Below, in pieces: positions 1 through 37,460 of a DNA stretch of 64,000 nt. The notes beneath the pieces were generated by a model that was given only the letters and a program-made list of their open reading frames with translations, did not search any database and was not told where the DNA came from. Source of the stretch: Macrostomum lignano (lineage: Eukaryota); NCBI GenBank assembly GCA_002269645.1, contig NIVC01000029.1:558001-622000 (forward strand), in the 5' to 3' direction. The position numbers were made by a program, and so were the translations under genes. Numbering within the stretch: position 1 is the stretch's first letter; the number at the start of each line of letters is the position of its first letter.

Positions 1-40
1 TGTGAGAAATTTTTTTTTATTTTAGTTTCTACAGGGCTGT

Positions 41-1062
41 TTGGTCGAGCAGTTTACATTGGATTCTCTTCGAGGGAAGCGAGTTTTTTTTCTGTACGGC
101 GAAAGTCAAAAGCGACAAAAGAAGCTGGAATCTGCCGTCGTCTATTATGGCGGAAGCGTTGCTTCGTTTTTTTCAAATGAGGTGTGTAGTTTTTGCAATG
201 CATTCGTTGTTTTTGTTTGTTGCTTGTTAATAGGGCAGATTAGAGACGTTGATAGATTTTTTGTAGCTATGGGCTCGTATTTTTTGCTTTTCCAGGTTGA
301 TTTAATCATCGCTGACGATTCCGCTGTCTCCATTGAAGCTAAACAATCTTTTTCGGAGTTTTCTAGGGGTTTCACCATGCAGCAGAGAGCCGTTACGCAA
401 ACTTCGAGTTCGCAATGCAGAATTGTCAAAACATTCGAAGATATTTTGACGAAAGCTCGCTTGCTGCAAATACCTGTCTACACTCCGGCAATATTTCGAG
501 ATCGAATTCGCGATCAAGTTTCTCAACACGAGCTGTGCCAGAAAACTATTTCTTCAGGGAGGTTTGCCGAAGAAGATCGGAATTTGACCCCACCGGCCGT
601 TGTTGTTACGGATGCCCAGCATTTGCTGAGACCAATCTTCAAAGATAACATTGATGTCGTCGACATTTTTGCAAACCCAAGGGCTAATAATAACGATGAA
701 AAAAATCGTCAAAAGCCTGACGGCAAAGAAAAACGGAAAGGTCGGTGTGAAAACTGTCGCGAAGCCTACGACGACTTTAATCAGCACATAACATTAAGCC
801 AAAAGCACCAAGATTTCGTTTCGAATAAAAAAATTTTACTGAAATCGACCAAATCATTTCAACTCTTCCGACGCTAGACAGCGCCCTAAATGAAGCGACT
901 CAAAAGGCTACCGCTCCTATGACACATCATGACACGAAAAAACCGGATTCGAAAGCACTACCTAACATATTTCAGCAAAATGACGGTGATAGACGCCAAG
1001 CCGCATCGCTTGGCGAAAATCGTCAGTCTGCTCGCAAATACGTCGACACCGAGTCCAAAAAA
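41..1062 (+). CDS. DBF4: DBF4/ASK-like protein exons (BRCT motif N, motif M, DBF4-type zinc finger): exon ~35-181, intron 182-295, exon 296-1062 with a 1-nt frameshift in the A7 run at 827-833; 5' end upstream of the window
   Basis: LRGKRVFFL..LESAVVYYGGSVASFFSNE|VDLIIAD resembles motif N. PAVVVTDAQHLLRPIF resembles motif M. KRKGRCENCREAYDDFNQHITLSQKHQDFV is a CCHH zf-DBF. The in-frame GT..AG intron 182-295 is phase 0. The -1 frame continues NFTEIDQIISTL (zf-DBF tail) and stays open to the donor AAA|GTGAGT at 1062/1063. Confidence 0.8.
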
Positions 1063-1127
1063 GTGAGTTTCGTTTAATGATCTCAAAATAGCTAGCTGCA
1101 TGCAACTCAATTGCTGTAGAGAAGTTC

Positions 1128-4100
1128 TTAAAAGGTGGTCCACCTAAACTACAGACACAACTGAAGCAGCTCTCTCAGTCTGTTTGGGGCTTTGACTTTT
1201 ATAAGGTGGTCCACCTAACCTACAGAAACAACTGAAGCAGCTTTCTCAGTCTGTTTGGGGCTTTGACTCTTAAAAGGTGGTCCACCTAACCTACAGACAC
1301 AACTGAAGCAGCTCTCTCAGTCTGTTTGAGGGTCACACGGATACACGGCAGCGGTTTTGAATTTAAGCTTCCGACTTTGACTTGTCTTTTTATTCTCTAA
1401 TTTCCTAGGAGCCTGAGGTCGAATTTCGTTCCCGCCAAATCGAACGCACTGGTGCCTCAAAAAGAGGGCGGAAATCGCGAAGCCGTTCGCGCTCTGCATC
1501 ACGCCTTGATGAAGGCGCTCAGTCGCACAACGCTACCGCGGATGCAGGCGCTACTCCAGCCTCGAAGAAGGCCGCATCGCCTGGTGAAAATCGTCGGTCT
1601 ACTCGCAAATACGTCGACACCGAGTCCAGAAAAGTGAGTTTCGCTTGATGATCTCAAAGTAGCTAGCTGCAACTCAATTGCTGTAGAGAAGCTGGTCCAC
1701 CTAACCTACAGAACAGACGCAACTGAAGCAGCTCTCTCAGTCTGTTTGGGGCTTTGACTCTTGGAAGGTGGTCCACCTAACCTACAGACACAACTGAAGC
1801 AGCTCTCTCAGTCTGTTTGGGGCTTTAACTCTTAAAAGGTGGTCAACCTAACCTACAGACACAACTGAAGCAGCTTTCTCAGTCTGTTTGGGGCTTTGAC
1901 TTTTATAAGGTGGTCCACCTAACCTACAGACACAACTGAAGCAGCTCTCTCAGTCTGTTTGGGGCTTTGACTCTTAAAAGGTGGTCCACCTAACCTACAG
2001 GCACAACTAAAGCAGCTCTCTCAGTCTGTTTGAGGGTCACACGGATACACGGCAGCGGTTTTGAATTTAAGCTTCCGACTTTGACTTGTCTTTTTATTCT
2101 CTAATTTCCTAGGAGCCTGAGGTCGAATTTCGTTCCCGCCAAATCGAACGCACTGGTGCCTCAAAAAGAGGGCGGAAATCGCGAAGCCGTTCGCGCTCTG
2201 CATCACGCCTTGATGAAGGCGCTCAGTCGCACAACGCTACCGCGGATGCAGGCGCTACTCCAGCCTCGAAGAAGGCCGCATCGCCTGGTGAAAATCGTCG
2301 GTCTACTGGCAAATCCGTCGACACCGAGTCCAGAAAAGTGAGTTTCGCTTGATGATCTCAAAGTAGCTAGCTGCAACTCAATTGCTGTAGAGAAGCTGGT
2401 CCACCTAACCTACAGACACAACTGAAGCAGCTCTCTCAGTCTGTTTGGGGCTTTGACTCTTGGAAGGTGGTCCACCTAACCTACAGACACAACTGAAGCA
2501 GCTCTCTCAGTCTGTTTGGGGCTTTAACTCTTAAAAGGTGGTCAACCTAACCTACAGACACAACTGAAGCAGCTCTCTCAGTCTGTTTGGGGCTTTGACT
2601 TTTATAAGGTGGTCCACCTAACCTACAGACACAACTGAAGCAGCTCTCTCAGTCTGTTTGGGGCTTTGACTTTTATAAGGTGGTCCACCTAACCTACAGA
2701 CACAACTGAAGCAGCTCTCTCAGTCTGTTTGGGGCTTTGACTTTTATAAGGTGTCCACCTAACCTACAGACACAACTGAAGCAGCTCTCTCAGTCTGTTT
2801 GGGGCTTTGACTCTTGGAAGGTGGTCCACCTAACCTACAGACACAACTGAAGCAGCTCTCTCAGTCTGTTTGGGGCCTTGGCTGTCAGAGCTGTCTTGAA
2901 AGTTTAGTGCGGGAATGTTTCCGTTTCTTGGAATGCAATCAGAACAGATTCTTAGAAAGCGAGCTGGTCCACCATGAGATCAGAATGTCTGCACTGTGTA
3001 AATGAATGGTCTCTAGGCATTCCGACTCAGATTATCGCCTAGTAGTGCTGTAGAGAAGGTGGTCCACCTAACCTACAGACACAACTGAAGCAGCTCTCTC
3101 AGTCTGTTTGAGGGTCACACGGATACACGGCAGCGGTTTTGAATTTAAGCTTCCGACTTTGACTTGTCTTTTTATTCTCTAACTTCCTAGGAGCCTGAGG
3201 TCGAATTTCGTTCCCGCCAAATCGAACGCACTGGTGCCTCAAAAAGAGGGCGGAAATCGCGAAGCCGTTCGCGCTCTGCATCACGCCTTGATGAAGGCGC
3301 TCAGTCGCACAACGCTACCGCGGATGCAGGCGCTACTCCAGCCTCGAAGAAGGCCGCATCGCCTGGTGAAAATCGTCGGTCAACTGGCAAATCCGTCGAC
3401 ACCGAGTCCAGAAAAGTGAGTTTCGCTTGATGATCTCAAAGTAGCTAGCTGCAACTCAATTGCTGTAGAGAAGCTGGTCCACCTAACCTACAGACATCAA
3501 CTGAAGCAGCTCTCTCAGTCTGTTTGGGGCTTTGACTTTTATAAGGTGGTCCACCTAACCTACAGAAACAACTGAAGCAGCTCTCTCAGTCTGTTTTGGG
3601 CTTTGACTTTTATAAGGTGGTCTACCTAACCTACAGACACAACTGAAGCAGCTTTCTCAGTCTGTTTGGGGCTTTGACTTTTATAAGGTGGTCCACCTAA
3701 CCTACAGACACAACTGAAGCAGCTCTCTCAGTCTGTTTGGGGCTTTGACTTTTATAAGGTGGTCCACCTAACCTACAGACACAACTGAAGCAGCTCTCTC
3801 AGTCTGTTTGAGGGTCACACGGATACACGGCAGCGGTTTTGAATTTAAGCTTCCGACTTTGACTTGTCTTTTTATTCTCTAACTTCCTAGGAGCCTGAGG
3901 TCGAATTTCGTTCCCGCCAAATCGAACGCACTGGTGCCTCAAAAAGAGGGCGGAAATCGCGAAGCCGTTCGCGCTCTGCATCACGCCTTGATGAAGGCGC
4001 TCAGTCGCACAACGCTACCGCGGATGCAGGCGCTACTCCAGCCTCGAAGAAGGCCGCATCGCCTGGTGAAAATCGTCGGTCTACTGGCAAATCCGTCGAC

Positions 4101-5030
4101 ACCGAGTCCAGAAAAGTGAGTTTCGCTTGATGATCTCAAAGTAGCTAGCTGCAACTCAATTGCTGTAGAGAAGCTGGTCCACCTAACCTACAGACACAAC
4201 TGAAGCAGCTCTCTCAGTCTGTTTGGGGCTTTGAATCTTGGAAGGTGGTCCACCTAACCTACAGACACATCTGAAGCAGCTTTCTCAGTCTGTTTGGGGC
4301 TTTGACTCTTGGAAGGTGGTCCACCTAACCTACAGACACAACTGAAGCAGCTCTCTCAGTCTGTTTGGGGCTTTAACTCTTAAAAGGTGGTCAACCTAAC
4401 CTACAGACACAACTGAAGCAGCTCTCTCAGTCTGTTTGGGGCTTTGACTTTTATAAGGTGGTCCACCTAACCTACAGACACAACTGAAGCAGCTCTCTCA
4501 GTCTGTTTGGGGCTTTGACTCTTGGAAGGTGGTCCACCTAACCTACAGACACAACTAAAGCAGCTCTCTCAGTCTGTTTGGGGCTTTGGCTCTCAGAGCT
4601 GTCTTGAAAGTTTAGTGCGGGAATGTTTCCGTTTCTTGGAATGCAATCAGAACAGATTCTTAGAAAGCGAGCTGGTCCACCATGAGATCAGAACGTCTGC
4701 ACTGTGTAAATGAATGGTCTCAAGGCATTCCGACTCAGATTATCGCCTAGTAGTGCTGTAGAGAAGGTGGTCCACCTAACCTACAGACACAACTGAAGCA
4801 GCTCTCTCAGTCTGTTTGGGGCTTTGACTCTTGGAAGGTGGTCCACCTAACCTACAGACACAACTGAAGCAGCTCTCTCAGTCTGTTTGGGGCTTTGGCT
4901 CTCAGAGCTGTCTTGAAAGTTTAGTGCGGGAATGTTTCCGTTTCTTGGAATGCAATCAGAACAGATTCTTAGAAAGCGAGCTGGTCCACCATGAGATCAG
5001 AACGTCTGCACTGTCTAAATGAAGGGTGTC
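1128..5030 (+). repeat. Intronic satellite in element A: 71-bp units (GGTGGTCCACCTAACCTACAGACACAACTGAAGCAGCTCTCTCAGTCTG...) plus ~240-bp long units
   Basis: The period is 71 bp (e.g. GGTCCAC at 2611 and 2682). Long variants lie at ~2820-3058, ~4530-4765 and ~4840-5030. The array fills introns 1063-1408, 1634-2112, 2338-3190, 3416-3890 and 4116-5149. Confidence 0.95.
1409..4115 (+). CDS. Four near-identical 225-bp phase-0/0 exons (1409-1633, 2113-2337, 3191-3415, 3891-4115), each encoding a 75-aa basic Ser/Arg-rich repeat
   Basis: Each exon is bounded by TTCCTAG| and |GTGAGT and has an open frame EPEVEFRSRQIERTGASKRGRKSRSRSRSASRLDEG...ENRRSTRKYVDTESRK. The 3' third matches the end of exon 296-1062. 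Confidence 0.7.
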
Positions 5031-5149
5031 TAAACGTTTTGACTTAGATTATCGCGTTGTAGTGCTTCAGAGAATTGACTTATTGACTTTTCAGGAAAAA
5101 TGAGCTAATGAGTATATCTAAGCTATGTAACTTGCTGTTTATTTTTCAG

Positions 5150-8092
5150 GTTTGCGATAGAGACGGCGATGCTACCAAAGCAAGGATAGACGTTGCTTTC
5201 GATTTAGTAGATGATGATTCGTTTGTGGACAAAAATCTTACGGTAGTAGACGATATTCTTGGTGGAAGGTTGCACTCAGCTTTAAGGGACATTGCAAATA
5301 CGAGTATACTACCTGAGGACGCTGAACTCGAGGAAGAAGATGGTGATGAAGATTATTATTTGGAGGAAGTCTGGTCTGATGATTTAGTTCCGTCCCAAGC
5401 GAAACTTAAGCATGAGAAGAAGAGGCATTGCTGCCTCTTTTGCGGAGAAATGTTTTCGAAGATCAGAAGGCATCTTATTCGGGCACACTCGAAGGAAATG
5501 TGTGTACAGCGCGCCCTCGCATTTAATCCTAAGTCTGATAGTAAGTTTTTGAAATAAGTTTTTTATGTAGGTCCTCATAGTAGTATTTAGTTTGTCTGAA
5601 AATAATTATCTGTTCATATTTTTTTCAGAATATGACCAGGAATTTGATCGCTTGCGCTTTCGAGGAGATTACGAACATAACATAAAAGTTATGACCCAGG
5701 AGAAGGAGGGAGGAATCATTGTGTGTCGCGAAAGAAGTTCTTCGGACATGAAAGATAATGAAGTTTCGTATTTGCCGTGCATTCACTGTTTTGGATTTTT
5801 TCGTAAAACTGAGTTAAGCAGGCATGTTCAGCGCTGCCGCTTTGTCGTAAATGTCAGCGATTTGAACAGGCGCACAGAAGCTGTCAGTGCAGGACGCTGC
5901 CTTCTCCTTGCATCATGCTTTCCGGCGAAATATCCGTCCAAATTTATTGAACTTATTAATAAAATGAAGGTAGACTCATGTAGCAAAGTAGCTCAATCAG
6001 ACAAGCTTATAATGGAACTTGGCTACTACGCCTATGAAGGTTTTACATCCGGAAAGACAGGAAAGAAAATTGTAACTGCGAAAATGCGTGAAATGTCGAG
6101 ATTACTTATGTCAGCTCGTGAAATTATGGGCGATCCCAGCGCTTGTCTTGACGATTTGCTGAAGCCATCATCATTTGATTTAGTTGTTGAGGCGACTCGA
6201 AATGTAGCGAAATTTACGGCCCAAGAAGATGCTCAGATTTGCGATTCTTTTTCTATTCCTTCGATGGCACTTAAGTGCGGGTTTTCTCTGAAGCTGGCTG
6301 CTGAACTGTCGTTAGTACGTGCCCTGAAATGCGAAATGCCCGAAGTAGCTCAGGAGCGACGCAACTTCATCACTCTGTATGAAACATCATGGAGCCGTAA
6401 AATATCTTCGATTGCACTTTTGTCCTTGAAAGAAAGAAAAATTGACAAGGGTCAGACATTGCCGTTAACTAGCGACATTCAGTTAATCACGAAGCACATT
6501 AACGAATATTTAAGCCACATCGACACGGAAAAGCTAAAAAGCAGCCCTTCTTACTGGAAAGAGGTGGCCGAATATGTTGCGATTCGTTTGTCTATTTTCA
6601 ACAAGCGCCGGGCGTCTGAGCCCTTCAAGCTGCGAGTTTCGGCGTGGCAGAAAGCAAGATCATGCAAAGATGTTGATGATACAACATTATCTGCGCTAAG
6701 TGAATTAGAAAAGCAAATGCTTTACCGGTTGACTATCGTTAATGTTCGAGGTAAGAGAGCACAGCGACCGGTTCCTCTGCTAGTTTCGAATGAGATTGCT
6801 GAAATTATCGATGAGCTCATTCGCACAAGACACCACGCTTCAAGTCCTTACGTATTCTGCAGTAGTGGAAGTTTGGGATATATATCCCCATTCGTTGCGC
6901 GCACAAATGTTGTCTCCAGTTGTCAAGGGCTCCAGTTCCCTGCTCGTCTATCTTCGACCAACCTTCGAAAATACATTGCCACTGTCTCTCAGATCCTTGA
7001 AATGAGAGAAAATGAGCTCGGATGGCTCTCCAACCATCTTGGACATAGCCTTAATGTTCACCATAATTTCTATCGATTGCATGAAAACACTATTGAGCTT
7101 GCTAAAGTAGGCAAGCTACTTCTGGCTATCGAGGCCGGTAGATTCGACCAGCTTAAAGGCAAAACTATCGAAGAGATTGATGTTAACGACATCGAAATTG
7201 ACTATGACATTGACGATAAGTCAGATGCAAAAAAAGATGATTTGAACGAATCCGGTGATGTGGAAGCCTCAATAGGCTCACAGGCTCGAGAATTAAAACG
7301 TGGTGACCAAAAGAGTCAAGCACCTCCTGAGAATAATGGAGCTCGTATCCAAGCTAAGGAATTTGAGGACGAGTCAATTTATCACGAAGGTTCTGTCGAC
7401 TTTCGCGGAGCCCCCCTGTCCATCAAGCAAGTCGAAAAAAAGAAGAATCGATTAGCTGTGCTCGACTCAGATGAATATGAAAGCGAAGTAGACAAAGACG
7501 ATTCAGACTACCAACCGACGAAAAAAACCAGAAAAGTGCAGAAAGCTAGAGCAAACGAAAGGCGGATTCGAAGGACGACTAAGCCAAAGGGTGCGACAGC
7601 AACAACGACTAATAACAAAAGCGAGCCAGGACATGGACAAGAGGACCCACAGAAGGACAAAAGCGAGCCAGGACCCGGACAAGAGGACCCACAGAAGGAC
7701 AAAAGCGAGCCAGGACCCGGACAAGAGGACCCACAGAAGGACAAAAGCGAGCCAGGACCCGGACAAGAGGACCCACAGAAGGACAAAAGCGCTCCTAGTT
7801 CGGAAGGTAAGGACAAAATGGGAACTGGGGGAAGAAAAAAACCAAAGTTGATTTCAGTTACTTCAATCCATTTCAGAAGTCAAGAAAAAAACTAATTCAG
7901 GAGCACATTGCGTGGAACAAAGACGAAAATGAGGCAATTAACCGCGCGATAGAAAAGATCGAAGACGGCAAAGTACCTGGTTTTGCAGCCCTTGGAGAGC
8001 TAAAAGCACGCGAACCTGCACTCCAGTCACGATCGATCCATAAAATAAAAACGAAGTTTTTCAATGAAATGAAAAAACGCGGCATTTTGTGA
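5150..8092 (+). CDS. CryptonV-like tyrosine recombinase: exon 5150-5540, intron 5541-5628, exon 5629-~7890, and a C-terminal Myb/SANT-like segment 7901-8092 in another frame
   Basis: Zn-binding motifs HCCLFC..IRRHLIRAH and YLPCIHCFGFF..LSRHVQRC. Tyrosine recombinase motifs FNKRRASE (Arg), VRGKRAQRPVPLL (Lys), STNLRKYIAT (xxxR box) and LSNHLGHSLNVHHNFYRL (His, catalytic Tyr). The phase-1 intron joins NPKSD-K-YDQEFDRLR. The tail reads HIAWNKDENEAI..GKVPG..EPALQSRSIHKIK. Confidence 0.85.
7618..7790 (+). repeat. 42-bp coding tandem repeat x4 (KSEPGPGQEDPQKD) in the recombinase tail
   Basis: AAAAGCGAGCCAGGACCCGGACAAGAGGACCCACAGAAGGAC is repeated in frame. Confidence 0.95.
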
Positions 8093-8284
8093 CTAAACGC
8101 TTTATGATTGCTAACACTAAGATTAAAAAGCATCTATTAGTTTAGCTGACAAGAAATACCTGTTCACTATCGATAGCATAGCGATGGCTTTTGGGGGCGG
8201 TCCAAGTTTGGGACGCCAAAATGAGTATGAGGGGCGCCAATTTTTAAGCTGGGGGTGCAAAAAACGTGTAGGGGGGGAATGCGA

Positions 8285-8700
8285 GTCGCCGTTTTAAAAA
8301 TGCTTCAATTTCTTGTATCTGTTTGATACAATTTCCATTTTAATAACTGTCGCCGTTTTAAAAATGCTTCAATTTCTTGTATCTGTTTGATACAATTTCC
8401 ATTTTAATAACTGTTGCCCTTTTAAAAATGCTTCAACTTCTTGTACTCCCTATGACTTTTTTAACTAATGCAATCCTAAGTTTGTTAAACGTGTAGTTTA
8501 AGAATGTACTTCCGGACTTAAATTAGTTTCAATGACTTTGCAGTTAGTTTAATTAGGTTTAAATCTTTTGCGTTAAGGCAAGCGAAATGATGCGGTATTT
8601 ATTTTCAAAATGCTTCAATTTCTTATATCTGTTTGATACAATTTCCATTTTAATAACTGTTGCCGTTTTAAAAATGCTTCAACTTCTTGTATCCCTGAGT
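8285..8700 (+). repeat. 64-bp subterminal direct repeats of element A
   Basis: GTCGCCGTTTTAAAAATGCTTCAATTTCTTG... occurs at 8285 and 8349, partially at ~8413, and again at ~8605-8695. Confidence 0.8.
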
Positions 8701-9654
8701 GTGCGTTGTTTTTCTTTCGTAACTAATGCAGTTTAACCCATAGTTTAGTAAAGCTAAATAAATTCGTTTGAACCAGGGTTTTTTTAATAAAATGGAATCG
8801 TAAACCTTTTTTATCTTCTGTTTCTTGAGAATTTCTGTTTTAATTAGCCCAAAATAACAGTTTGAAACTCATAAATTTTCTACAAAGAAAGAGGTCTAAC
8901 TAAACCAACTGTTTTTTTGCGGTCCACCTAACCCGGTCCCCAAAACGTAGTTAGTGAACCGCCACAGTTTCCACGAACTGGCTATTCCGTCAAGTTAACA
9001 AAAAGATAACCCTAGCTAGCCTTTCGCGTTGTCAAAACAGACTCTATTTTTTAACCGGAATTGCGTGGTCCACGTAACGCATTAACATAACTCAGGTCCC
9101 GCTAAACACACAGACAGTCGTAAGAGTGTCTGTCTGTCTGCCAGCCTAAGTGAGTCACTGTGTCTGCCAGTTCAAAACTTTGTTTACTGCTATACAGTGC
9201 TATACAAAGGCCATTCCAATCTTATTTTCAAGTGCTACTCCCGTTTTGAAATAGTTGTATACAAAAACAACCCATTGTATAGCCTGGGGTCACAATAAGC
9301 CGCTTTGTAAAGCGTTTTTTTCACTTAGCTGGGCTCATTTGGCCCAATAGCACCACAGTGTCTTATACGACTGAAGCGTTGATGCAGCTTGCAGCGACAC
9401 AAAGCACCCACAGCGCACTCAGCAGCTGTAGCAATATAAACCAGCATTATTTAGCCTTATAATGTTGTATAACAGATAAAAGTTTGGCAACAACATGATC
9501 GCATACAGTAAATACAGAAAGAGTAACACACAAATTTGGTCTAGATACTACCGACCAGTTATATAGAGAGAGCAAAATTGATTTGTTAGATTTTTAGTAC
9601 TATAATGATACTAAGCCGTCGTTTGTCTGTGTGGCCGCCATTTTAAATGAATTA

Positions 9655-10055: not shown

Positions 10056-10094
10056 TTGATTTGGTGCCGCTTGTAAATTTCAGAGAAAAGCCTG

Positions 10095-10995: not shown

Positions 10996-10999
10996 TCAG

Positions 11000-20878: not shown

Positions 20879-21589
20879 TCTTACGACTGTCTGTGTGTTT
20901 AGCGGGACCTGAGTTATGTTAATGCGTTACGTGGACCACGCAATTCCGGTTAAAAAATAGAGTCTGTTTTGACAACGCGAAAGGCTAGCTAGGGTTATCT
21001 TTTTGTTAACTTGACGGAATAGCCAGTTCGGGGAAACTGTGGTGGTTCACTAACTACGTTTTGGGGACCGGGTTAGGTGGACCGCAAAAAAACAGTTGGT
21101 TTAGTTAGACCTCTTTCGTTGTAGAAAATTTATTGCTTTAAACTGTTCTTTTGAACTAATTAAAACAGAAATTCTCAAAAAGAACAGATAAAAGGGTTAC
21201 GACGTCATTTAATGAAAATATCCCAAGTTCAAACCAATTTATTTAGCATTATTAATCGGGTTAATCGGGTTAAACAAATGTACGATCGCATTAGTTAGTT
21301 GCGTCGCGTGAATACAAGAAGGTGAATGAAAATAAAGCATTTTGAAAATAAATACCGAATCATATCAAATACTAACTGTAAACTCATTAAAACTAATTTA
21401 GGTCAAAATGTATGCTTCAAATACATGTTAACAAACGGAAGATTCCATTAGTTAAAAAAGGTCATCCGAGTACGAGCCTACAAGAAGTTGAAGGGCATTT
21501 TTAATAACGACAAAAGTTCCTAAAACTGAAATTAAATTTATTTGACTACATCAGTCCTATTATACTGAATGAGTTAATGAGCAATCATA

Positions 21590-21922
21590 TGCTAAGCCAA
21601 TCATTTTACCGACTTTCATCTTTTCGTTCACGCAGATGATGGCTTAATCTTCTTATTTTTTCTACGAAATATTCTCCTGGACCTTCCCTGCCTCCGTGGT
21701 CCGGGACCGCTTCTGTTATTGATCTGTCATTGCCTCTCTCACGAATTTCAGCTTACCCAGCCATCGAATCCGCTTTCGTCAGCTCAGCTCTATGATGAAC
21801 CTTTCTATATTTCTCCTCAATTTAGTGGTTTGAATCTTCTTTTACAGTTCGTTTTAACCTTCATCTCGGTGAAACGCAGTCAGTCTCGTCGAGCTCAGGC
21901 GAACAAAATCAACCACAGGCTC
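21590..21922 (-). pseudogene. Degenerate exon remnant of element B (repeat-exon start joined to recombinase-tail-like fragments)
   Basis: The minus strand reads TTTGTAG|GAG CCT GTG GTT GAT TTT (EPVVDF, cf. EPEVEF) followed by a stop. AGCTGACGAAAGCGGATTCGATGG resembles 7549-7573. Confidence 0.6.
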
Positions 21923-21954
21923 CTACAAAGGTAGAAAATAAAATTAACTGACAA

Positions 21955-24900
21955 TCAAACAGACACAGAAATCTGTTCCAGTTGTGTCTGTAGGTTATGT
22001 GGACCACCTGAGAGCCAGAGCCTCAAACAGACAGAGAAATCTGTTCGAGTTGTGTCTGTAGGTTAGATGGACCAGCTATTCTACAGCACTTCTAGGCGAT
22101 AATCTGAGCCAGGAATCTCCAAGAGCCTCTCGTTACACATCCAGATGTTCTGCCTTGATGCTAGACTAGCCCACTTTCTAGGAATCTGTTCTGATTGCAT
22201 TCTAACAAACTGAAGCATTCTCGGCACTAAACTTTCTCGGCGGCTCTGAGAGCCAGAGCCTCAAACAGACAGAGAAATCTGTTCGAGTTGTGTCTGTAGG
22301 TTAGGTGGACCAGCTACTCCACAGCACTTCTAGGCGATAATCTGAGCCAGGAATCTCCGAGAGCCTCTCGTTACACATCCAGATGTTCTGCCTTGATGCT
22401 GGACTAGCTCACTTTCTAGGAATCTGTTCTGATTACGAGCTTCATTCTAACAAACTGAAGCATTCTCGGCACTAAACTTTCTCGGCGGCTCTGAGATCCA
22501 GAGCCTCAAACAGACAGAAATCTGTTCGAGTTGTGTCTGTAGGTTAGGTGGACCAGCTACTCCACAGCACTTCTAGGCGATAATCTGAGCCAGGAGTCTT
22601 CGAGAGACTTTCGTTACACATCCAGATGTTCTGCCTTGATGCTGGACTAGCTCACTTTCTAGGAATCTGTTCTGATTGCATTCTAACAAACTGAAGCATT
22701 CTCGGCACTAAACTTTCTCGGCGGCTCTAAGAGCCAGAGCCTAAACAGACAGAGAAATCTGCTCGAGTTGTGTCTGTAGGTTAGGTGGACCACCTTCTGA
22801 GAGACAAAGCCTCAAACAGACTGAGAGAGCTGCTTCAGTTCTGTCTGTAGGTTATGTGGACCATTTAAGAGCCAGAGCCTCAAACAGACAGAGAAATCTG
22901 TTCGAGTTGTGTCTGTAGGTTAGGTGGACCAGCTATTCTACAGCACTTCTAGGCGATAATCTGAGCCAGGAATCTCCGAGAGCCTCTCGTTACACATCCA
23001 GATGTTCTGCCTTGATGCTGGACTAGCTCACTTTCTAGGAATCTGTTCTGATTGCATTCTAACAAACTGAAGCATTCTCGGCACTAAACTTTCTCGGCGG
23101 CTCTGAGAGCCAGAGCCTCAAACAGACAGAGAAATCTGTTCGAGTTGAGTCTGTAGGTTAGGTGGACCAGCTACTCCACAGCACTTCTAGGCGATAATCT
23201 GAGCCAGGAGTCTTCGAGAGACTTTCGTTACACATCCAGATGTTCTGCCTTGATGCTGGACTAGCTCACTTTCTAGGAATCTGTTCTGATTACGAGCTTC
23301 ATTCTAACAAACTGAAGCATTCTCGGCACTAAACTTTCTCGGCGGCTCTGAGATCCAGAGCCTCAAACAGACAGAAATCTGTTCGAGTTGTGTCTGTAGG
23401 TTAGGTGGACCAGCTACTCCACAGCACTTCTAGGCGATAATCTGAGCCAGGAGTCTTCGAGAGACTTTCGTTACACATCCAGATGTTCTGCCTTGATGCT
23501 GGACTAGCTCACTTTCTAGGAATCTGTTCTGATTGCATTCTAACAAACTGAAGCATTTTCTGCACTAAACTTTCTCGGCGGCTCTAAGAGCCAGAGCCTA
23601 AACAGACAGAGAAATCTGCTCGAGTTGTGTCTGTAGGTTAGGTGGACCACCTTCTGAGAGACAAAGCCTCAAACAGACTGAGAGAGCTGCTTCAGTTCTG
23701 TCTGTAGGTTATGTGGACCATTTAAGAGCCAGAGCCTCAAACAGACAGAGAAATCTGTTCGAGTTGTGTCTGTAGGTTAGGTGGACCAGCTATTCTACAG
23801 CACTTCTAGGCGATAATCTGAGCCAGGAATCTCCGAGAGCCTCTCGTTACACATCCAGATGTTCTGCCTTGATGCTGGACTAGCTCACTTTCTAGGAATC
23901 TGTTCTGATTGCATTCTAACAAACTGAAGCATTCTCGGCACTAAACTTTCTCGGCGGCTCTGAGAGCCAGAGCCTCAAACAGACAGAAATCTGTTCGAGT
24001 TGTGTCTGTAGGTTAGGTGGACCAGCTACTCCACAGCACTTCTAGGCGATAATCTGAGCCAGGAATCTCGAGAGCCTCTCGTTACACATCCAGATGTTCT
24101 GCCTTGATGCTGGACTAGCTCACTTTCTAGGAATCTGTTCTGATTGCATTCTAACAAACTGAAGCATTCTCGCACTAAACTTTCTCGGCGGCTCTAAGAG
24201 CCAGAGCCTCAAACAGACAGAGAAATCTGTTCGAGTTGAGTCTGTAGGTTAGGTGGACCAGCTACTCCACAGCACTTCTAGGCGATAATCTGAGCCAGGA
24301 ATCTCCGAGAGCCTCTCGTTACACATCCAGACGTTCTGCCTTGATGCTGGACTAGCTCACTTTCTAGGAATCTGTTCTGATTACATTCTAACAAACTGAA
24401 GCATTCTCGGCACTAAACTTTCTCGGCGGCTCTGAGATCCAGAGCCTCAAACAGACAGAAATCTGTTCAAGTTGTGTCTGTAGGTTAGGTGGACCAGCTA
24501 CTCCACAGCACTTCTAGGCGATAATCTGAGCCAGGAGTCTTCGAGAGACTTTCGTTACACATCCAGATGTTCTGCCTTGATGCTGGACTAGCTCACTTTC
24601 TAGGAATCTGTTCTGATTGCATTCTAACAAACTGAAGCATTCTCGGCACTAAACTTTCTCGGCGGCTCTAAGAGCCAGAGCCTAAACAGACAGAGAAATC
24701 TGCTCGAGTTGTGTCTGTAGGTTAGGTGGACCACCTTCTGAGAGACAAAGCCTCAAACAGACTGAGAGAGCTGCTTCAGTTCTGTCTGTAGGTTATGTGG
24801 ACCATTTAAGAGCCAGAGCCTCAAACAGACAGAGAAATCTGTTCGAGTTGTGTCTGTAGGTTAGGTGGACCAGCTATTCTACAGCACTTCTAGGCGATAA

Positions 24901-27900
24901 TCTGAGCCAGGAATCTCCGAGAGCCTCTCGTTACACATCCAGATGTTCTGCCTTGATGCTGGACTAGCTCACTTTCTAGGAATCTGTTCTGATTGCATTC
25001 TAACAAACTGAAGCATTCTCGGCACTAAACTTTCTCGGCGGCTCTGAGAGCCAGAGCCTCAAACAGACAGAGAAATCTGTTCGAGTTGAGTCTGTAGGTT
25101 AGGTGGACCAGCTACTCCACAGCACTTCTAGGCGATAATCTGAGCCAGGAGTCTTCGAGAGACTTTCGTTACACATCCAGATGTTCTGCCTTGATGCTGG
25201 ACTAGCTCACTTTCTAGGAATCTGTTCTGATTACGAGCTTCATTCTAACAAACTGAAGCATTCTCGGCACTAAACTTTCTCGGCGGCTCTGAGATCCAGA
25301 GCCTCAAACAGACAGAAATCTGTTCGAGTTGTGTCTGTAGGTTAGGTGGACCAGCTACTCCACAGCACTTCTAGGCGATAATCTGAGCCAGGAGTCTTCG
25401 AGAGACTTTCGTTACACATCCAGATGTTCTGCCTTGATGCTGGACTAGCTCACTTTCTAGGAATCTGTTCTGATTGCATTCTAACAAACTGAAGCATTTT
25501 CTGCACTAAACTTTCTCGGCGGCTCTAAGAGCCAGAGCCTAAACAGACAGAGAAATCTGCTCGAGTTGTGTCTGTAGGTTAGGTGGACCACCTTCTGAGA
25601 GACAAAGCCTCAAACAGACTGAGAGAGCTGCTTCAGTTCTGTCTGTAGGTTATGTGGACCATTTAAGAGCCAGAGCCTCAAACAGACAGAGAAATCTGTT
25701 CGAGTTGTGTCTGTAGGTTAGGTGGACCAGCTATTCTACAGCACTTCTAGGCGATAATCTGAGCCAGGAATCTCCGAGAGCCTCTCGTTACACATCCAGA
25801 TGTTCTGCCTTGATGCTGGACTAGCTCACTTTCTAGGAATCTGTTCTGATTGCATTCTAACAAACTGAAGCATTCTCGGCACTAAACTTTCTCGGCGCCT
25901 CTGAGAGCCAGAGCCTCAAACAGACAGAGAAATCTGTTCGAGTTGAGTCTGTAGGTTAGGTGGACCAGCTACTCCACAGCACTTCTAGGCGATAATCTGA
26001 GCCAGGAATCTCCGAGAGCCTCTCGTTACACATCCAGATGTTCTGCCTTGATGCTGGACTAGCTCACTTTCTAGGAATCTGTTCTGATTACATTCTAACA
26101 AACTGAAGCATTCTCGGCACTAAACTTTCTCGGCGGCTCTGAGATCCAGAGCCTCAAACAGACAGAAATCTGTTCGAGTTGTGTCTGTAGGTTAGGTGGA
26201 CCAGCTACTCCACAGCACTTCTAGGCGATAATCTGAGCCAGGAGTCTTCGAGAGACTTTCGTTACACATCCAGATGTTCTGCCTTGATGCTGGACTAGCT
26301 CACTTTCTAGGAATCTGTTCTGATTGCATTCTAACAAACTGAAGCATTTTCTGCACTAAACTTTCTCGGCGGCTCTAAGAGCCAGAGCCTAAACAGACAG
26401 AGAAATCTGCTCGAGTTGTGTCTGTAGGTTAGGTGGACCACCTTCTGAGAGACAAAGCCTCAAACAGACTGAGAGAGCTGCTTCAGTTCTGTCTGTAGGT
26501 TATGTGGACCATTTAAGAGCCAGAGCCTCAAACAGACAGAGAAATCTGTTCGAGTTGTGTCTGTAGGTTAGGTGGACCAGCTATTCTACAGCACTTCTAG
26601 GCGATAATCTGAGCCAGGAATCTCCGAGAGCCTCTCGTTACACATCCAGATGTTCTGCCTTGATGCTGGACTAGCTCACTTTCTAGGAATCTGTTCTGAT
26701 TGCATTCTAACAAACTGAAGCATTCTCGGCACTAAACTTTCTCGGCGGCTCTGAGAGCCAGAGCCTCAAACAGACAGAGAAATCTGTTCGAGTTGAGTCT
26801 GTAGGTTAGGTGGACCAGCTACTCCACAGCACTTCTAGGCGATAATCTGAGCCAGGAGTCTTCGAGAGACTTTCGTTACACATCCAGATGTTCTGCCTTG
26901 ATGCTGGACTAGCTCACTTTCTAGGAATCTGTTCTGATTACGAGCTTCATTCTAACAAACTGAAGCATTCTCGGCACTAAACTTTCTCGGCGGCTCTGAG
27001 ATCCAGAGCCTCAAACAGACAGAAATCTGTTCGAGTTGTGTCTGTAGGTTAGGTGGACCAGCTACTCCACAGCACTTCTAGGCGATAATCTGAGCCAGGA
27101 GTCTTCGAGAGACTTTCGTTACACATCCAGATGTTCTGCCTTGATGCTGGACTAGCTCACTTTCTAGGAATCTGTTCTGATTGCATTCTAACAAACTGAA
27201 GCATTTTCTGCACTAAACTTTCTCGGCGGCTCTAAGAGCCAGAGCCTAAACAGACAGAGAAATCTGCTCGAGTTGTGTCTGTAGGTTAGGTGGACCACCT
27301 TCTGAGAGACAAAGCCTCAAACAGACTGAGAGAGCTGCTTCAGTTCTGTCTGTAGGTTATGTGGACCATTTAAGAGCCAGAGCCTCAAACAGACAGAGAA
27401 ATCTGTTCGAGTTGTGTCTGTAGGTTAGGTGGACCAGCTATTCTACAGCACTTCTAGGCGATAATCTGAGCCAGGAATCTCCGAGAGCCTCTCGTTACAC
27501 ATCCAGATGTTCTGCCTTGATGCTGGACTAGCTCACTTTCTAGGAATCTGTTCTGATTGCATTCTAACAAACTGAAGCATTCTCGGCACTAAACTTTCTC
27601 GGCGGCTCTGAGAGCCAGAGCCTCAAACAGACAGAAATCTGTTCGAGTTGTGTCTGTAGGTTAGGTGGACCAGCTACTCCACAGCACTTCTAGGCGATAA
27701 TCTGAGCCAGGAATCTCCGAGAGCCTCTCGTTACACATCCAGATGTTCTGCCTTGATGCTGGACTAGCTCACTTTCTAGGAATCTGTTCTGATTGCATTC
27801 TAACAAACTGAAGCATTCTCGGCACTAAACTTTCTCGGCGGCTCTAAGAGCCAGAGCCTCAAACAGACAGAGAAATCTGTTCGAGTTGAGTCTGTAGGTT

Positions 27901-30900
27901 AGGTGGACCAGCTACTCCACAGCACTTCTAGGCGATAATCTGAGCCAGGAATCTCCGAGAGCCTCTCGTTACACATCCAGACGTTCTGCCTTGATGCTGG
28001 ACTAGCTCACTTTCTAGGAATCTGTTCTGATTACATTCTAACAAACTGAAGCATTCTCGGCACTAAACTTTCTCGGCGGCTCTGAGATCCAGAGCCTCAA
28101 ACAGACAGAAATCTGTTCAAGTTGTGTCTGTAGGTTAGGTGGACCAGCTACTCCACAGCACTTCTAGGCGATAATCTGAGCCAGGAGTCTTCGAGAGACT
28201 TTCGTTACACATCCAGATGTTCTGCCTTGATGCTGGACTAGCTCACTTTCTAGGAATCTGTTCTGATTGCATTCTAACAAACTGAAGCATTCTCGGCACT
28301 AAACTTTCTCGGCGGCTCTAAGAGCCAGAGCCTAAACAGACAGAGAAATCTGCTCGAGTTGTGTCTGTAGGTTAGGTGGACCACCTTCTGAGAGACAAAG
28401 CCTCAAACAGACTGAGAGAGCTGCTTCAGTTCTGTCTGTAGGTTATGTGGACCATTTAAGAGCCAGAGCCTCAAACAGACAGAGAAATCTGTTCGAGTTG
28501 TGTCTGTAGGTTAGGTGGACCAGCTATTCTACAGCACTTCTAGGCGATAATCTGAGCCAGGAATCTCCGAGAGCCTCTCGTTACACATCCAGATGTTCTG
28601 CCTTGATGCTGGACTAGCTCACTTTCTAGGAATCTGTTCTGATTGCATTCTAACAAACTGAAGCATTCTCGGCACTAAACTTTCTCGGCGGCTCTGAGAG
28701 CCAGAGCCTCAAACAGACAGAGAAATCTGTTCGAGTTGAGTCTGTAGGTTAGGTGGACCAGCTACTCCACAGCACTTCTAGGCGATAATCTGAGCCAGGA
28801 GTCTTCGAGAGACTTTCGTTACACATCCAGATGTTCTGCCTTGATGCTGGACTAGCTCACTTTCTAGGAATCTGTTCTGATTACGAGCTTCATTCTAACA
28901 AACTGAAGCATTCTCGGCACTAAACTTTCTCGGCGGCTCTGAGATCCAGAGCCTCAAACAGACAGAAATCTGTTCGAGTTGTGTCTGTAGGTTAGGTGGA
29001 CCAGCTACTCCACAGCACTTCTAGGCGATAATCTGAGCCAGGAGTCTTCGAGAGACTTTCGTTACACATCCAGATGTTCTGCCTTGATGCTGGACTAGCT
29101 CACTTTCTAGGAATCTGTTCTGATTGCATTCTAACAAACTGAAGCATTTTCTGCACTAAACTTTCTCGGCGGCTCTAAGAGCCAGAGCCTAAACAGACAG
29201 AGAAATCTGCTCGAGTTGTGTCTGTAGGTTAGGTGGACCACCTTCTGAGAGACAAAGCCTCAAACAGACTGAGAGAGCTGCTTCAGTTCTGTCTGTAGGT
29301 TATGTGGACCATTTAAGAGCCAGAGCCTCAAACAGACAGAGAAATCTGTTCGAGTTGTGTCTGTAGGTTAGGTGGACCAGCTATTCTACAGCACTTCTAG
29401 GCGATAATCTGAGCCAGGAATCTCCGAGAGCCTCTCGTTACACATCCAGATGTTCTGCCTTGATGCTGGACTAGCTCACTTTCTAGGAATCTGTTCTGAT
29501 TGCATTCTAACAAACTGAAGCATTCTCGGCACTAAACTTTCTCGGCGCCTCTGAGAGCCAGAGCCTCAAACAGACAGAGAAATCTGTTCGAGTTGAGTCT
29601 GTAGGTTAGGTGGACCAGCTACTCCACAGCACTTCTAGGCGATAATCTGAGCCAGGAATCTCCGAGAGCCTCTCGTTACACATCCAGATGTTCTGCCTTG
29701 ATGCTGGACTAGCTCACTTTCTAGGAATCTGTTCTGATTACATTCTAACAAACTGAAGCATTCTCGGCACTAAACTTTCTCGGCGGCTCTGAGATCCAGA
29801 GCCTCAAACAGACAGAAATCTGTTCGAGTTGTGTCTGTAGGTTAGGTGGACCAGCTACTCCACAGCACTTCTAGGCGATAATCTGAGCCAGGAGTCTTCG
29901 AGAGACTTTCGTTACACATCCAGATGTTCTGCCTTGATGCTGGACTAGCTCACTTTCTAGGAATCTGTTCTGATTGCATTCTAACAAACTGAAGCATTTT
30001 CTGCACTAAACTTTCTCGGCGGCTCTAAGAGCCAGAGCCTAAACAGACAGAGAAATCTGCTCGAGTTGTGTCTGTAGGTTAGGTGGACCACCTTCTGAGA
30101 GACAAAGCCTCAAACAGACTGAGAGAGCTGCTTCAGTTCTGTCTGTAGGTTATGTGGACCATTTAAGAGCCAGAGCCTCAAACAGACAGAGAAATCTGTT
30201 CGAGTTGTGTCTGTAGGTTAGGTGGACCAGCTATTCTACAGCACTTCTAGGCGATAATCTGAGCCAGGAATCTCCGAGAGCCTCTCGTTACACATCCAGA
30301 TGTTCTGCCTTGATGCTGGACTAGCTCACTTTCTAGGAATCTGTTCTGATTGCATTCTAACAAACTGAAGCATTCTCGCACTAAACTTTCTCGGCGGCTC
30401 TAAGAGCCAGAGCCTCAAACAGACAGAGAAATCTGTTCGAGTTGAGTCTGTAGGTTAGGTGGACCAGCTACTCCACAGCACTTCTAGGCGATAATCTGAG
30501 CCAGGAATCTCCGAGAGCCTCTCGTTACACATCCAGATGTTCTGCCTTGATGCTGGACTAGCTCACTTTCTAGGAATCTGTTCTGATTACATTCTAACAA
30601 ACTGAAGCATTCTCGGCACTAAACTTTCTCGGCGGCTCTGAGATCCAGAGCCTCAAACAGACAGAAATCTGTTCGAGTTGTGTCTGTAGGTTAGGTGGAC
30701 CAGCTACTCCACAGCACTTCTAGGCGATAATCTGAGCCAGGAGTCTTCGAGAGACTTTCGTTACACATCCAGATGTTCTGCCTTGATGCTGGACTAGCTC
30801 ACTTTCTAGGAATCTGTTCTGATTGCATTCTAACAAACTGAAGCATTCTCGGCACTAAACTTTCTCGGCGGCTCTAAGAGCCAGAGCCTAAACAGACAGA

Positions 30901-37400: not shown

Positions 37401-37460
37401 ACAGCAATTGAGTTGCAGGCCCTGCAGCTAGCTACTTTGAGATCATCAAACGAAACTCAC

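What the first reader, a model, noticed from the sequence alone, without database searches (positions are those of the whole stretch)
41..8092. DBF4 (Cdc7 kinase activator) spliced in frame to a CryptonV-like tyrosine recombinase
Seen: DBF4-like motifs N, M and C, then a phase-0 donor (1062), four phase-0/0 exons, a phase-0 acceptor (5150) and a phase-1 intron (5541-5628) into a full recombinase ORF. This gives one predicted protein of roughly 1,500 aa if the A7 run at 827-833 is really A8. Element B shares sequence with A only from about 895 onward and has no DBF4 segment between its exon and its 5' end, so DBF4 was added to this lineage. Known: Dbf4 recruits Cdc7 to MCM at replication origins. 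Inference: either the transposon captured a DBF4 gene fragment at DNA level (intron kept), which could tie recombination to S phase or origins, or a 5'-truncated element fused to the host DBF4 gene. I know of no described DBF4-recombinase fusion but have not searched.
Basis: partly seen in the sequence, partly recalled or inferred. Interest (0 to 1): 0.88.

Follow-up and report, generated by a model that had tools for sequence, protein, structure and literature searches.

The report
DBF4 fragment inside a flatworm Crypton transposon
A tyrosine-recombinase (Crypton-type) transposon of the flatworm Macrostomum lignano carries a piece of the replication-kinase activator gene DBF4 lined up in frame with its recombinase, a new example of such transposons picking up chromatin or replication modules, but no transcript yet shows that the fusion protein is made.

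Summary
The window is Macrostomum lignano DNA. Positions 35-1062 encode a DBF4-like segment. The zinc-finger motif C is certain, the BRCT-like motif N is borderline, and motif M is seen by eye only. Four identical-phase 225-nt exons and a zinc-finger exon at 5150 link it in frame to a genuine tyrosine recombinase, shown by its catalytic residues and a XerA/IntI-like fold.

- The open frame needs two homopolymer fixes, not one: A7 at 827-833 and A7 at 7885-7891.
- A/B homology starts at 998, not 895.
- The DBF4 exon starts at an acceptor at 35, so the gene is 5' incomplete in the window.

Public gene models join DBF4 to the repeat exon, join repeat exons to the recombinase, and place transposon-type exons upstream of a DBF4 N exon. 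A sister element has the same layout with a chromodomain, and fish relatives carry SET domains. All of these elements sit in (GTCT)n microsatellites, as published for CryptonV.

Capture of a DBF4 gene fragment is therefore the best reading (about 0.5). It is unproven: there is no transcript evidence, element A's 5' end lies off the window, and SL trans-splicing (the leader ends in AUG) could express the recombinase on its own. Verdict: a new variant of a known kind, of moderate interest.

The parts
1..34 (+). 3' end of an intron or outron with a polypyrimidine tract and acceptor (..tttctacag|G)
   Evidence: Sequence. P0002, P0157 and P0158 all have the exon starting with GC, which is window position 35.
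35..181 (+). DBF4 exon 1 in the window: BRCT-like motif N (GCLVEQFTLDSLRGKRVFFLYGES...FFSNE), phase 0/0
   Evidence: Pfam BRCT E 0.0012, below the cut-off. Weak alignment to the yeast Dbf4 HBRCT region. 100% identical to P0002.
182..295 (+). Intron of 114 nt kept inside the DBF4 segment (GT..AG, in frame, no stop codon)
   Evidence: Removed in models P0002 and P0157. Sequence.
296..997 (+). DBF4 exon 2 body: motif M-like stretch (590-640) and the zf-DBF motif C (731-867)
   Evidence: Pfam zf-DBF 3.4e-9 and 6.5e-16. PDB Dbf4/DBF4 matches. Motif M by eye only.
827..833 (+). A7 run that breaks the frame inside zf-DBF. Annotated copies imply A8 (P0002) or an A6T6-type version (P0157). It overlaps an AATAAA at 824.
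998..1062 (+). Transposon-type exon tail (AASLGENRQSARKYVDTESKK) fused to the DBF4 exon, followed by donor GTGAGT. Homology with the repeat exons and with element B starts here.
1063..5149 (+). Tandem array of units, each made of an intron with a 71-bp satellite plus a 225-nt phase-0/0 exon. Exons lie at 1409-1633, 2113-2337, 3191-3415 and 3891-4115. Each satellite unit carries GGTCCACCTAA.
   Evidence: The splice 1062->1409 is used in P0002 and P0157.
5150..5540 (+). Exon encoding an acidic region plus the first C2H2-like zinc finger (5432-5503). The acceptor is TTTCAG|G, phase 0. There is no in-frame ATG upstream of the finger within the exon.
   Evidence: The acceptor matches the trans-splice motif in PMC8629364.
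5541..5628 (+). Phase-1 intron, at the same position as in paralogue P0004
5629..7806 (+). Second zinc finger (5778-5837), tyrosine-recombinase core and an acidic low-complexity tail with 42-bp repeats (7615-7791). Core residues: R 6609, K 6753, R 6966, H 7044, H 7059, Y 7071.
7807..7876 (+). Third intron (phase 1)
   Evidence: P0001 and P0158 read SSE|EVKKK across it.
7877..8092 (+). Conserved C-terminal tail exon (..GKVPGFAALGELK..KFFNEMKKRGIL*). It is in frame only if the A7 run at 7885-7891 is A6.
   Evidence: No Pfam match.
8093..9117 (+). 3' non-coding part of element A: 64-bp repeats, GGTCCACCTAA (8921), GGTCCACGTAA (9067), and the terminus ..GGTCCCGCTAAACACACAGACAG (9096-9117), followed by a TCTG-type flank
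20887..39138 (-). Element B: an 18.25-kb non-autonomous relative. It has the same 3' end, the 5' terminus CTGTCTGTGTGTTTACGTGGAC, (GTCT)n on both sides, one exon tail (37461-37529), 15.4 kb of 238-bp satellite, a remnant of the repeat exon (about 21860-21925), and neither DBF4 nor a recombinase.

Best explanation
Element A is a microsatellite-targeting, CryptonV-like tyrosine-recombinase (YR) transposon of Macrostomum lignano. Its gene has a long multi-exon 5' part made of tandemly amplified, phase-0/0 'linker' exons.

A genomic fragment of a DBF4 gene has become embedded in that exon array. The fragment consists of the BRCT-like exon, its intron, and the exon with motifs M and C, truncated in the C-terminal tail at about position 998. 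Its own acceptor (35) and the transposon's exon tail and donor (998-1062) keep everything in phase 0.

The locus therefore encodes one ORF: (upstream transposon exons) - DBF4 N/M/C - four Arg/Ser/Lys-rich linker exons - acidic region plus two zinc fingers - YR - conserved tail.

Shown here:
- The domains.
- The phases.
- The element's 3' terminus.
- The microsatellite flank.
- The parallel architecture of a sister element.

Inferred:
- That the exons are cis-spliced into one mRNA.
- That the DBF4 module acts like the chromodomain or SET modules of sister elements, as an accessory tether. It might bind Cdc7 and so reach MCM-loaded chromatin, steering or timing recombination at the (GTCT)n site.

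The two one-base homopolymer differences in this window are most likely assembly errors or very recent slippage. The rest of the protein is identical to the annotated copies.
For: - Organism and identity: the recombinase part is 100% identical to UniRef A0A1I8J1L2 from M. lignano, with zero mismatches over 888 aa after the homopolymer fix.
- DBF4.
- YR: invariant R, K, R, H, H and Y in 30 homologues. Two homologues hit Pfam Phage_integrase. The AF2 model has pLDDT 85.8. The top six PDB fold hits are XerA and VchIntIA.
- Annotated models: P0002 and P0157 splice DBF4 at 1062 to the repeat exon. P0158 chains an exon tail, three variant repeat exons, the DBF4 N exon, further repeat exons and the identical YR.
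- Repeat exons are found in the protein database only together with this DBF4 or this YR.
- Variant and window repeat exons differ by a 3-aa (in-frame) length difference at the protein level.
- Sister element P0004 (55% identity): chromodomain exons, 390-nt phase-0/0 repeat exons, a zinc-finger exon, the same phase-1 intron, the YR and the same tail.
- That sister element is bounded by (GTCT)n in two loci with unrelated outer flanks.
- SET domains sit at the N-terminus of 9 of 39 long family members.
- A's 3' terminus and B's two termini are the only terminus matches in the window, so DBF4 lies on the element side of A's 3' end.
- CryptonV families are published as microsatellite-specific (PMC8869645).
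Against: - No transcript or protein evidence was reachable.
- The supporting models come from an older annotation. They are partial at exon boundaries, and one of them (P0158) also runs into an unrelated downstream gene, so they may be ab initio chains.
- The NCBI annotation of the Mlig_3_7 assembly, which does contain the chromodomain paralogue, shows no protein for either the DBF4 part or the YR part.
- The window copy has two frameshifts.
- P0158 shows a diverged, shortened DBF4 exon 2 next to an identical N exon and an identical YR. I cannot explain this.
- No separate host DBF4 was found that could have been the donor. The search method is insensitive to divergent sequences.
- Element A's 5' end is off the window.
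- Motifs N and M are not verified at profile level.
Confidence: 0.5

Rival explanations
1. Two expression units. The DBF4 segment is a dead or irrelevant passenger, or a separately expressed short protein. The recombinase is made on its own, in one of two ways. Either it starts at the ATG at 5108 on an unspliced 5' end (as model P0001 does), or the M. lignano spliced leader is trans-spliced to the TTTCAG|G acceptor at 5150, and its 3'-terminal AUG falls in frame (M-VCDRDG..). On this view the in-frame chain is coincidence plus gene-predictor chaining.
For: - The M. lignano SL ends in ..TTGCATG, about 30% of genes are trans-spliced, and the acceptor motif is [T/C]TNCAG (PMC8629364).
- The 5150 acceptor fits that motif and is in phase 0.
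- P0001 is annotated as a stand-alone gene.
- Many family members are stand-alone proteins starting about 15 aa before the first zinc finger.
- The repeat exon is also open in another frame.
- The window copy is frameshifted.
Against: - Five upstream GTGAGT donors lie in cis, and these normally out-compete trans-splicing if transcription reads through.
- The ATG at 5108 sits in the polypyrimidine tract and is not conserved.
- The sister element's annotated model splices its N-terminal domain and repeat exons onto the homologous zinc-finger exon.
- P0002 and P0157 already join DBF4 to a repeat exon.
Confidence: 0.25
2. Host-gene fusion. This is the worm's own DBF4 gene. A 5'-truncated element, or an element followed by a deletion, became joined to its last exon at about 998. 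Any chimeric transcript is an accident tolerated at the C-terminus of DBF4.
For: - All zf-DBF proteins found for M. lignano (P0002, P0157, P0003, and the N exon in P0158) are this sequence, and no other DBF4 was seen.
- The copy number (3-4 models) fits one locus per subgenome.
- The kept intron and the native-looking acceptor at 35.
- An unspliced read-through past the donor at 1062 stops after 4 codons (TAA at 1075), so a normal-length DBF4 could still be made.
Against: - Transposon-type exons lie upstream of a DBF4 N exon in P0158.
- YR integration does not produce 5' truncations.
- An essential S-phase gene would be expected in the NCBI Mlig_3_7 protein set, and it is not there.
- A diverged second DBF4 exon-2 remnant sits next to transposon exons.
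Confidence: 0.2
3. Assembly artefact. The juxtaposition arises from mis-joining long reads inside the shared satellite or exon repeats.
For: - The region is extremely repetitive.
- There are two homopolymer discrepancies.
- Array copy number varies from 3 to about 25 between loci of the sister element.
Against: - The DBF4-to-tail junction at 998 is inside unique sequence within a single exon.
- Independent models from another assembly contain the same junction (P0002, P0157) and the same repeat-exon-to-YR order (P0158).
Confidence: 0.05

Closest known systems
CryptonV / Crypton DNA transposons (Goodwin 2003; Kojima & Jurka 2011, PMC3212892; Kapitonov & Jurka 2012, as cited in PMC8869645)
   Same: - They encode only a tyrosine recombinase, with no reverse transcriptase.
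- The ends sit in short direct repeats, here GTCT/TCTG units of a microsatellite.
- Microsatellite-specific insertion is published for CryptonV.
- Joined ends would form an inverted-arm core site.
   Different: - This element has clear inverted termini of about 22 bp (19/22 matching).
- Its gene has many introns, which are filled with satellites carrying the terminal-like motif GGTCCACNTAA.
- It has tandemly amplified coding exons.
- It has an N-terminal DBF4 module.
- Placement within Repbase CryptonV could not be tested.
M. lignano chromodomain-YR element (PAA76011.1 / A0A267FQG6; loci L001 and L002)
   Same: - 55% identical YR.
- Same zinc fingers.
- Same phase-1 intron.
- Same C-terminal tail.
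- Phase-0/0 repeat exons.
- (GTCT)n flanks and GGTCCAC.TAA subterminal motifs.
   Different: - The N-terminal module is a chromodomain with its own ATG.
- The repeat exons are unrelated in sequence.
- It is annotated in the NCBI Mlig_3_7 protein set.
Chromoviruses (Ty3/Gypsy integrases with a chromodomain) and other transposases fused to chromatin readers
   Same: The logic is the same: a recombination enzyme gains a host-derived chromatin-binding module that can direct where it acts.
   Different: - The enzyme class differs (DDE integrase versus YR).
- The module differs.
- DBF4 is a kinase activator and MCM docking factor, not a histone-mark reader.
Crypton-host gene fusions and domestications (ATF7IP intronic YR in birds; KCTD1, ZMYM2-4, QRICH1, KIAA1958; PMC3212892)
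   Same: A Crypton YR reading frame is joined by splicing to host-gene exons.
   Different: - In most of those cases the catalytic residues are lost and the fused genes are fixed host genes.
- Here the catalytic set is intact and the unit still has transposon termini.
Dbf4/DBF4 (Cdc7 regulatory subunit; Chiffon, Dfp1)
   Same: The N, M, C order, and a CCHH zf-DBF motif C with the NF..ID..I extension, matching yeast and human proteins.
   Different: - No start codon or N-terminal region in the window.
- The C-terminal tail is replaced by transposon exons.
- Motifs N and M are only weakly supported.

Membership tests
DBF4 / Dbf4 family | Motif C: DBF4-type CCHH zinc finger | tested here: met
   Pfam zf-DBF 6.5e-16 over profile positions 1-45 on the frame-corrected protein P0002, and 3.4e-9 over positions 1-32 on the raw ORF. 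Yeast Dbf4 (7pt6) 3.8e-6 and human DBF4 (4f99) 6e-4. In this window the finger is split by the A7 frameshift.
DBF4 / Dbf4 family | Motif N: BRCT-like domain near the N-terminus | tested here: inconclusive
   Pfam BRCT E 0.0012, 19.5 bits, below the 21.3-bit cut-off. A non-significant alignment to the yeast HBRCT region. The single-sequence AF2 model was unusable (pLDDT 38).
DBF4 / Dbf4 family | Motif M: Cdc7-binding proline-rich motif between N and C | tested here: inconclusive
   No profile or PDB match covered it. The resemblance of VVVTDAQHLLRPIF (590-640) to motif M rests on my own recollection only.
DBF4 / Dbf4 family | Binds and activates Cdc7 kinase | not testable with these tools
   Needs a biochemical or genetic assay.
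Tyrosine recombinase superfamily | Catalytic residues R-K-H-R-H/W-Y in order | tested here: met
   R327, K375, R446, H472 (9 residues before the Tyr), H477 and Y481 are invariant in 30 homologues. The first His of 'HxxR' is Thr in more than 90% of the family, which is a family-wide deviation.
Tyrosine recombinase superfamily | Catalytic-domain fold | tested here: met
   The AF2 model has pLDDT 85.8. The top six Foldseek PDB hits are XerA (5hxy) and VchIntIA (2a3v), probability 1.0, E 6e-3 to 2e-2, target TM 0.41-0.48. Two homologues hit Pfam Phage_integrase at 5e-6. The window protein itself has no Pfam hit.
Crypton (CryptonV-like) transposon | YR is the only enzyme; no reverse transcriptase or methyltransferase | tested here: met
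   No other enzymatic domain was found between 35 and 9117.
Crypton (CryptonV-like) transposon | Defined termini in short direct repeats; microsatellite target | tested here: inconclusive
   For A, only the 3' terminus (9096-9117) with a TCTG-type flank is in the window. Both ends with (GTCT)n are seen for B and for the sister element in L001 and L002.
Crypton (CryptonV-like) transposon | Mobility: copies at unrelated loci | tested here: inconclusive
   The sister element lies at two loci with unrelated outer flanks. For A itself, only indirect hints exist: P0158 continues into a downstream gene that is absent from the window.
Crypton (CryptonV-like) transposon | Phylogenetic grouping with Repbase CryptonV recombinases | not testable with these tools
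   No Repbase sequences were available.
SL trans-spliced gene (rival for the recombinase) | Acceptor motif [T/C]TNCAG, with an SL-donated AUG in frame | tested here: met
   TTTCAG|GTT at 5144-5152 is in phase 0, and the SL ends in ATG (PMC8629364). Actual SL reads are not testable here.

The most novel reading that the evidence does not exclude
The DBF4 module is functional within the transposon protein. By binding Cdc7 and docking on MCM double hexamers it brings the recombinase (or the kinase) to licensed origins or replicating DNA. Excision and integration at (GTCT)n sites would then be coupled to S phase. This would be the first transposon known to have co-opted the regulatory subunit of the replication-initiation kinase. 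It would also be part of a wider, undescribed habit of this animal YR family of swapping N-terminal chromatin modules (DBF4, chromodomain, SET).
Probability: 0.12. Interest if true: 0.85.

Novelty: new variant of a known kind. Interest (0 to 1): 0.58.

Why it matters
How eukaryotic tyrosine-recombinase transposons choose their targets and their timing is essentially unknown.

This animal family has more than 5,000 representatives at E<1e-3, in fish, echinoderms, hemichordates, insects and flatworms. In different members its N-terminus carries a SET domain, a chromodomain or, here, DBF4. That pattern points to repeated acquisition of host chromatin or replication modules.

A DBF4 module would link transposition to the Cdc7/MCM pathway. 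That idea is testable in a flatworm with transgenesis and abundant stem cells.

I found no paper that mentions DBF4 together with Crypton, or Crypton or DBF4 together with Macrostomum.

Even if the fusion is not expressed, the locus documents three things: DNA-level capture of a gene fragment by a Crypton, extreme exon-intron array amplification, and microsatellite targeting.

Tried and rejected
- Exact-protein contig look-ups all returned nothing, so I could not obtain sequence upstream of the window or any RNA-derived contig. Tried: P0001, P0002, P0003, P0158 and window ORFs 5691-7895, 269-877, 377-877 and 5108-5557.
- A third protein search with the repeat exons found no further carriers.
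- The single-sequence AlphaFold model of the DBF4 protein was unusable, with pLDDT 38.
- A profile of the recombinase family against PDB sequences found only weak zinc-finger matches (Sgf11 type) and no recombinase. The fold search was needed instead.
- Pfam found nothing for the conserved C-terminal tail. I therefore do not call it Myb/SANT, although it looks like one by eye.
- phmmer of DBF4 against the 149 best recombinase homologues found no other DBF4-bearing member.
- Literature searches for DBF4+Crypton, Macrostomum+DBF4 and Macrostomum+Crypton found nothing relevant.
- I rejected a second recombinase or DBF4 copy in the window.
- I rejected a prokaryotic or viral origin: the best matches are M. 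lignano proteins.

Full report
ORIGIN

The window is eukaryotic. The recombinase region is 100% identical to UniRef A0A1I8J1L2 of the flatworm Macrostomum lignano. The DBF4 region is 100% identical to A0A1I8HXN8.

OBSERVATION: THE DBF4 SEGMENT

- ORF 41-877 hits Pfam zf-DBF at 3.4e-9, but only over profile positions 1-32 of 45. The frame breaks in the A7 run at 827-833.
- Adding one A gives SNKKNFTEIDQIISTL. This is exactly the annotated protein P0002, which covers the whole zf-DBF profile (6.5e-16).
- P0002 also aligns to motif C of yeast Dbf4 (7pt6, 3.8e-6) and human DBF4 (4f99_B, 6e-4).
- Motif N is a sub-threshold BRCT hit (E 0.0012).
- Motif M (590-640) is supported only by eye. A single-sequence structure model was useless.
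- The 114-nt intron 182-295 is real in the annotated models.
- The first exon begins at an acceptor at 34/35, so the gene is 5' incomplete in the window.

OBSERVATION: THE SPLICE CHAIN

- Donor AAAAAA|GTGAGT lies at 1062.
- Four 225-nt exons (1409, 2113, 3191, 3891) have identical acceptors and donors, all in phase 0.
- Acceptor TTTCAG|G lies at 5150.
- The phase-1 intron is 5541-5628.
- A further phase-1 intron, 7807-7876, precedes a conserved tail exon ending at 8092.
- With both one-base fixes the ORF is 1,532 aa and has zero mismatches to P0001 over 888 aa.
- Two homopolymer indels against no substitutions points to assembly error or very recent slippage.
- P0157 implies a third version of the first run, of the A6T6 type.

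THE RECOMBINASE

- HMMER against 1.84 billion representatives finds 5,295 relatives at E<1e-3.
- They come from teleosts, a hemichordate, a brittle star, a beetle and flatworms, and all are 'uncharacterized'.
- In 30 aligned homologues R327, E330, K375, R446, H472, H477 and Y481 are invariant (window coordinates).
- Two homologues hit Pfam Phage_integrase.
- An AF2 model (pLDDT 85.8) has XerA and VchIntIA as its six best PDB matches.
- This is a tyrosine recombinase (YR) with two N-terminal C2H2-like fingers.

TRANSPOSON ANATOMY

- The string CTGTCTGTGTGTTTANNNGGAC occurs three times in the window: at A's 3' end (9096-9117), B's 3' end (20887-20908) and B's 5' end (39117-39138).
- The ends are inverted: 14 bp perfectly, and about 19 of 22 overall.
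- They abut (GTCT)n/(TCTG)n.
- Joined in a circle, they would form inverted arms around a GTCT-type spacer, as expected for a YR core site (general description in PMC3212892).
- Element B is 18.25 kb and non-autonomous. It has one exon tail, 15.4 kb of 238-bp satellite, and a remnant of the repeat exon. It has no DBF4 and no YR.
- A/B homology in the first exon starts at 998, not 895.
- GGTCCACNTAA occurs 120 times against 0.03 expected, in the intron satellites and near the ends. All copies inside elements A and B point the same way as their element.

THE SISTER ELEMENT

- The nearest paralogue is P0004 (PAA76011.1, 55% identity). It has an N-terminal chromodomain, duplicated Ser-rich segments, the same fingers, YR and tail.
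- In locus L001 its gene has an ATG exon, 390-nt phase-0/0 repeat exons and the same phase-1 intron.
- In a second locus, L002, the exon-plus-intron unit is amplified about 25-fold.
- L001 and L002 share only the element. In both loci it is flanked on both sides by (GTCT)n, with unrelated outer flanks.
- This matches the published statement that some CryptonV families insert specifically into microsatellites (PMC8869645).
- Among 39 family members with long N-termini, 9 carry a SET domain, one a chromodomain and one a BRCT domain.

IS DBF4 PART OF THE ELEMENT?

For:
- P0002 and P0157 join DBF4 at 1062 to a repeat exon.
- P0158 is a 1,855-aa model in the same 90% cluster as P0001. It chains an exon tail, three variant repeat exons, the DBF4 N exon, a diverged and shortened DBF4 exon-2 remnant, repeat exons in a shifted frame, and then the identical YR. 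It then runs into a gene that is absent from the window.
- Transposon exons therefore flank DBF4 on both sides in at least one copy.
- No A 5' terminus lies inside the window.
- Repeat exons occur in the database only with this DBF4 or this YR.

Against or unresolved:
- These models are partial and may be ab initio chains.
- The NCBI Mlig_3_7 protein set contains the chromodomain paralogue but neither part of this locus.
- No donor DBF4 was found.
- The mosaic in P0158 (identical N exon and YR, diverged exon 2) is unexplained.
- I could not fetch the upstream sequence or any transcript contig.

RIVAL: SEPARATE EXPRESSION OF THE RECOMBINASE

- M. lignano trans-splices a 35-nt leader ending in ATG to about 30% of its genes, at [T/C]TNCAG acceptors (PMC8629364).
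- Spliced at 5150, or at 35, that ATG is in frame.
- The first in-frame ATG after 5150 lies inside the first, family-invariant zinc finger.
- Translation must therefore start from one of three places: upstream exons, the leader, or the non-conserved ATG at 5108 used by P0001.
- The five upstream cis donors and the sister element's architecture favour cis-splicing. Only RNA data can decide.

VERDICT

- The sequence features are real.
- The capture reading is the best supported (about 0.5).
- Separate expression units (0.25) and a host-gene fusion (0.2) remain open.
- Host-Crypton fusions and accessory targeting modules are both known ideas (PMC3212892).
- A DBF4 module on a catalytically intact YR transposon is new. 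I found no literature on it.

Noticed in passing
window 20887-39138 (- strand): Element B is an 18.25-kb non-autonomous relative. About 15.4 kb of it is a 238-bp satellite sitting inside what is an intron in element A. It has perfect 14-bp inverted ends and (GTCT)n on both sides.
   Followed up: partly
window 1137-4850, 8921, 9067, 20927-38875, 39052: The motif GGTCCACNTAA occurs 120 times against 0.03 expected by chance. It is in every intron-satellite unit and next to the termini, and all copies inside elements A and B point the same way as their element. It may be a recombinase or accessory-protein binding site that has been amplified internally.
   Followed up: partly
window 7885-7891: A second homopolymer discrepancy: A7 here, where annotated proteins P0001 and P0158 imply A6. 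It puts the conserved C-terminal tail exon out of frame. Together with 827-833 this suggests homopolymer errors in this assembly.
   Followed up: yes
L001 8821-17831 and L002 8826-47467 (M. lignano NIVC01000850.1 and NIVC01001364.1): A chromodomain-bearing sister transposon lies at two loci. Its 1.2-1.3 kb unit of coding exon plus intron is present about 3 times at one locus and about 25 times at the other, so the gene spans 6.6 kb versus 36 kb. Both copies lie in (GTCT)n.
   Followed up: partly
proteins P0056, P0137, P0110 (teleost RefSeq XP_055048601, XP_041943149, XP_048861681): Fish members of the same recombinase family carry an N-terminal SET domain (aa 35-186, E down to 1e-20). I did not find this SET-YR architecture described in the papers I searched.
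   Followed up: partly
protein P0158 aa 288-344 (UniRef A0A1I8JFG5): A strongly diverged, shortened copy of DBF4 exon 2 sits between an N exon and a recombinase that are both identical to the window. This mosaic is unexplained. Possibilities are a second DBF4 remnant in the element, gene conversion, or a chimeric contig.
   Followed up: partly
window 7615-7791: A 42-bp coding repeat is present in 4.2 copies (KSEPGPGQEDPQKD) in the recombinase's C-terminal low-complexity region.
   Followed up: no
window 9640-10030 and 10090-10990: Two further short-period tandem arrays (units such as CATTTCACTTGAGCTAGTGT and TATCCGTGCACTTTTGTTATCATTCAC) lie just outside element A's 3' end. They account for the overlapping multi-frame ORFs at 10061-11259.
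   Followed up: no
window 11385-11450: A stretch that looks tRNA-derived (..GGTTCGATTCCCGATCCC..) may be a SINE head. ARAGORN calls no tRNA anywhere in the window.
   Followed up: partly
window 46488-52569 (+): Exons of an MFS_2-type sugar/solute transporter gene (Pfam 2.9e-22 and 3.7e-30), apparently an ordinary host gene.
   Followed up: no
window 824-829: A canonical AATAAA overlaps the A-run inside the DBF4 zinc finger. If it were used as a poly(A) signal it would truncate DBF4 transcripts before the transposon exons.
   Followed up: no
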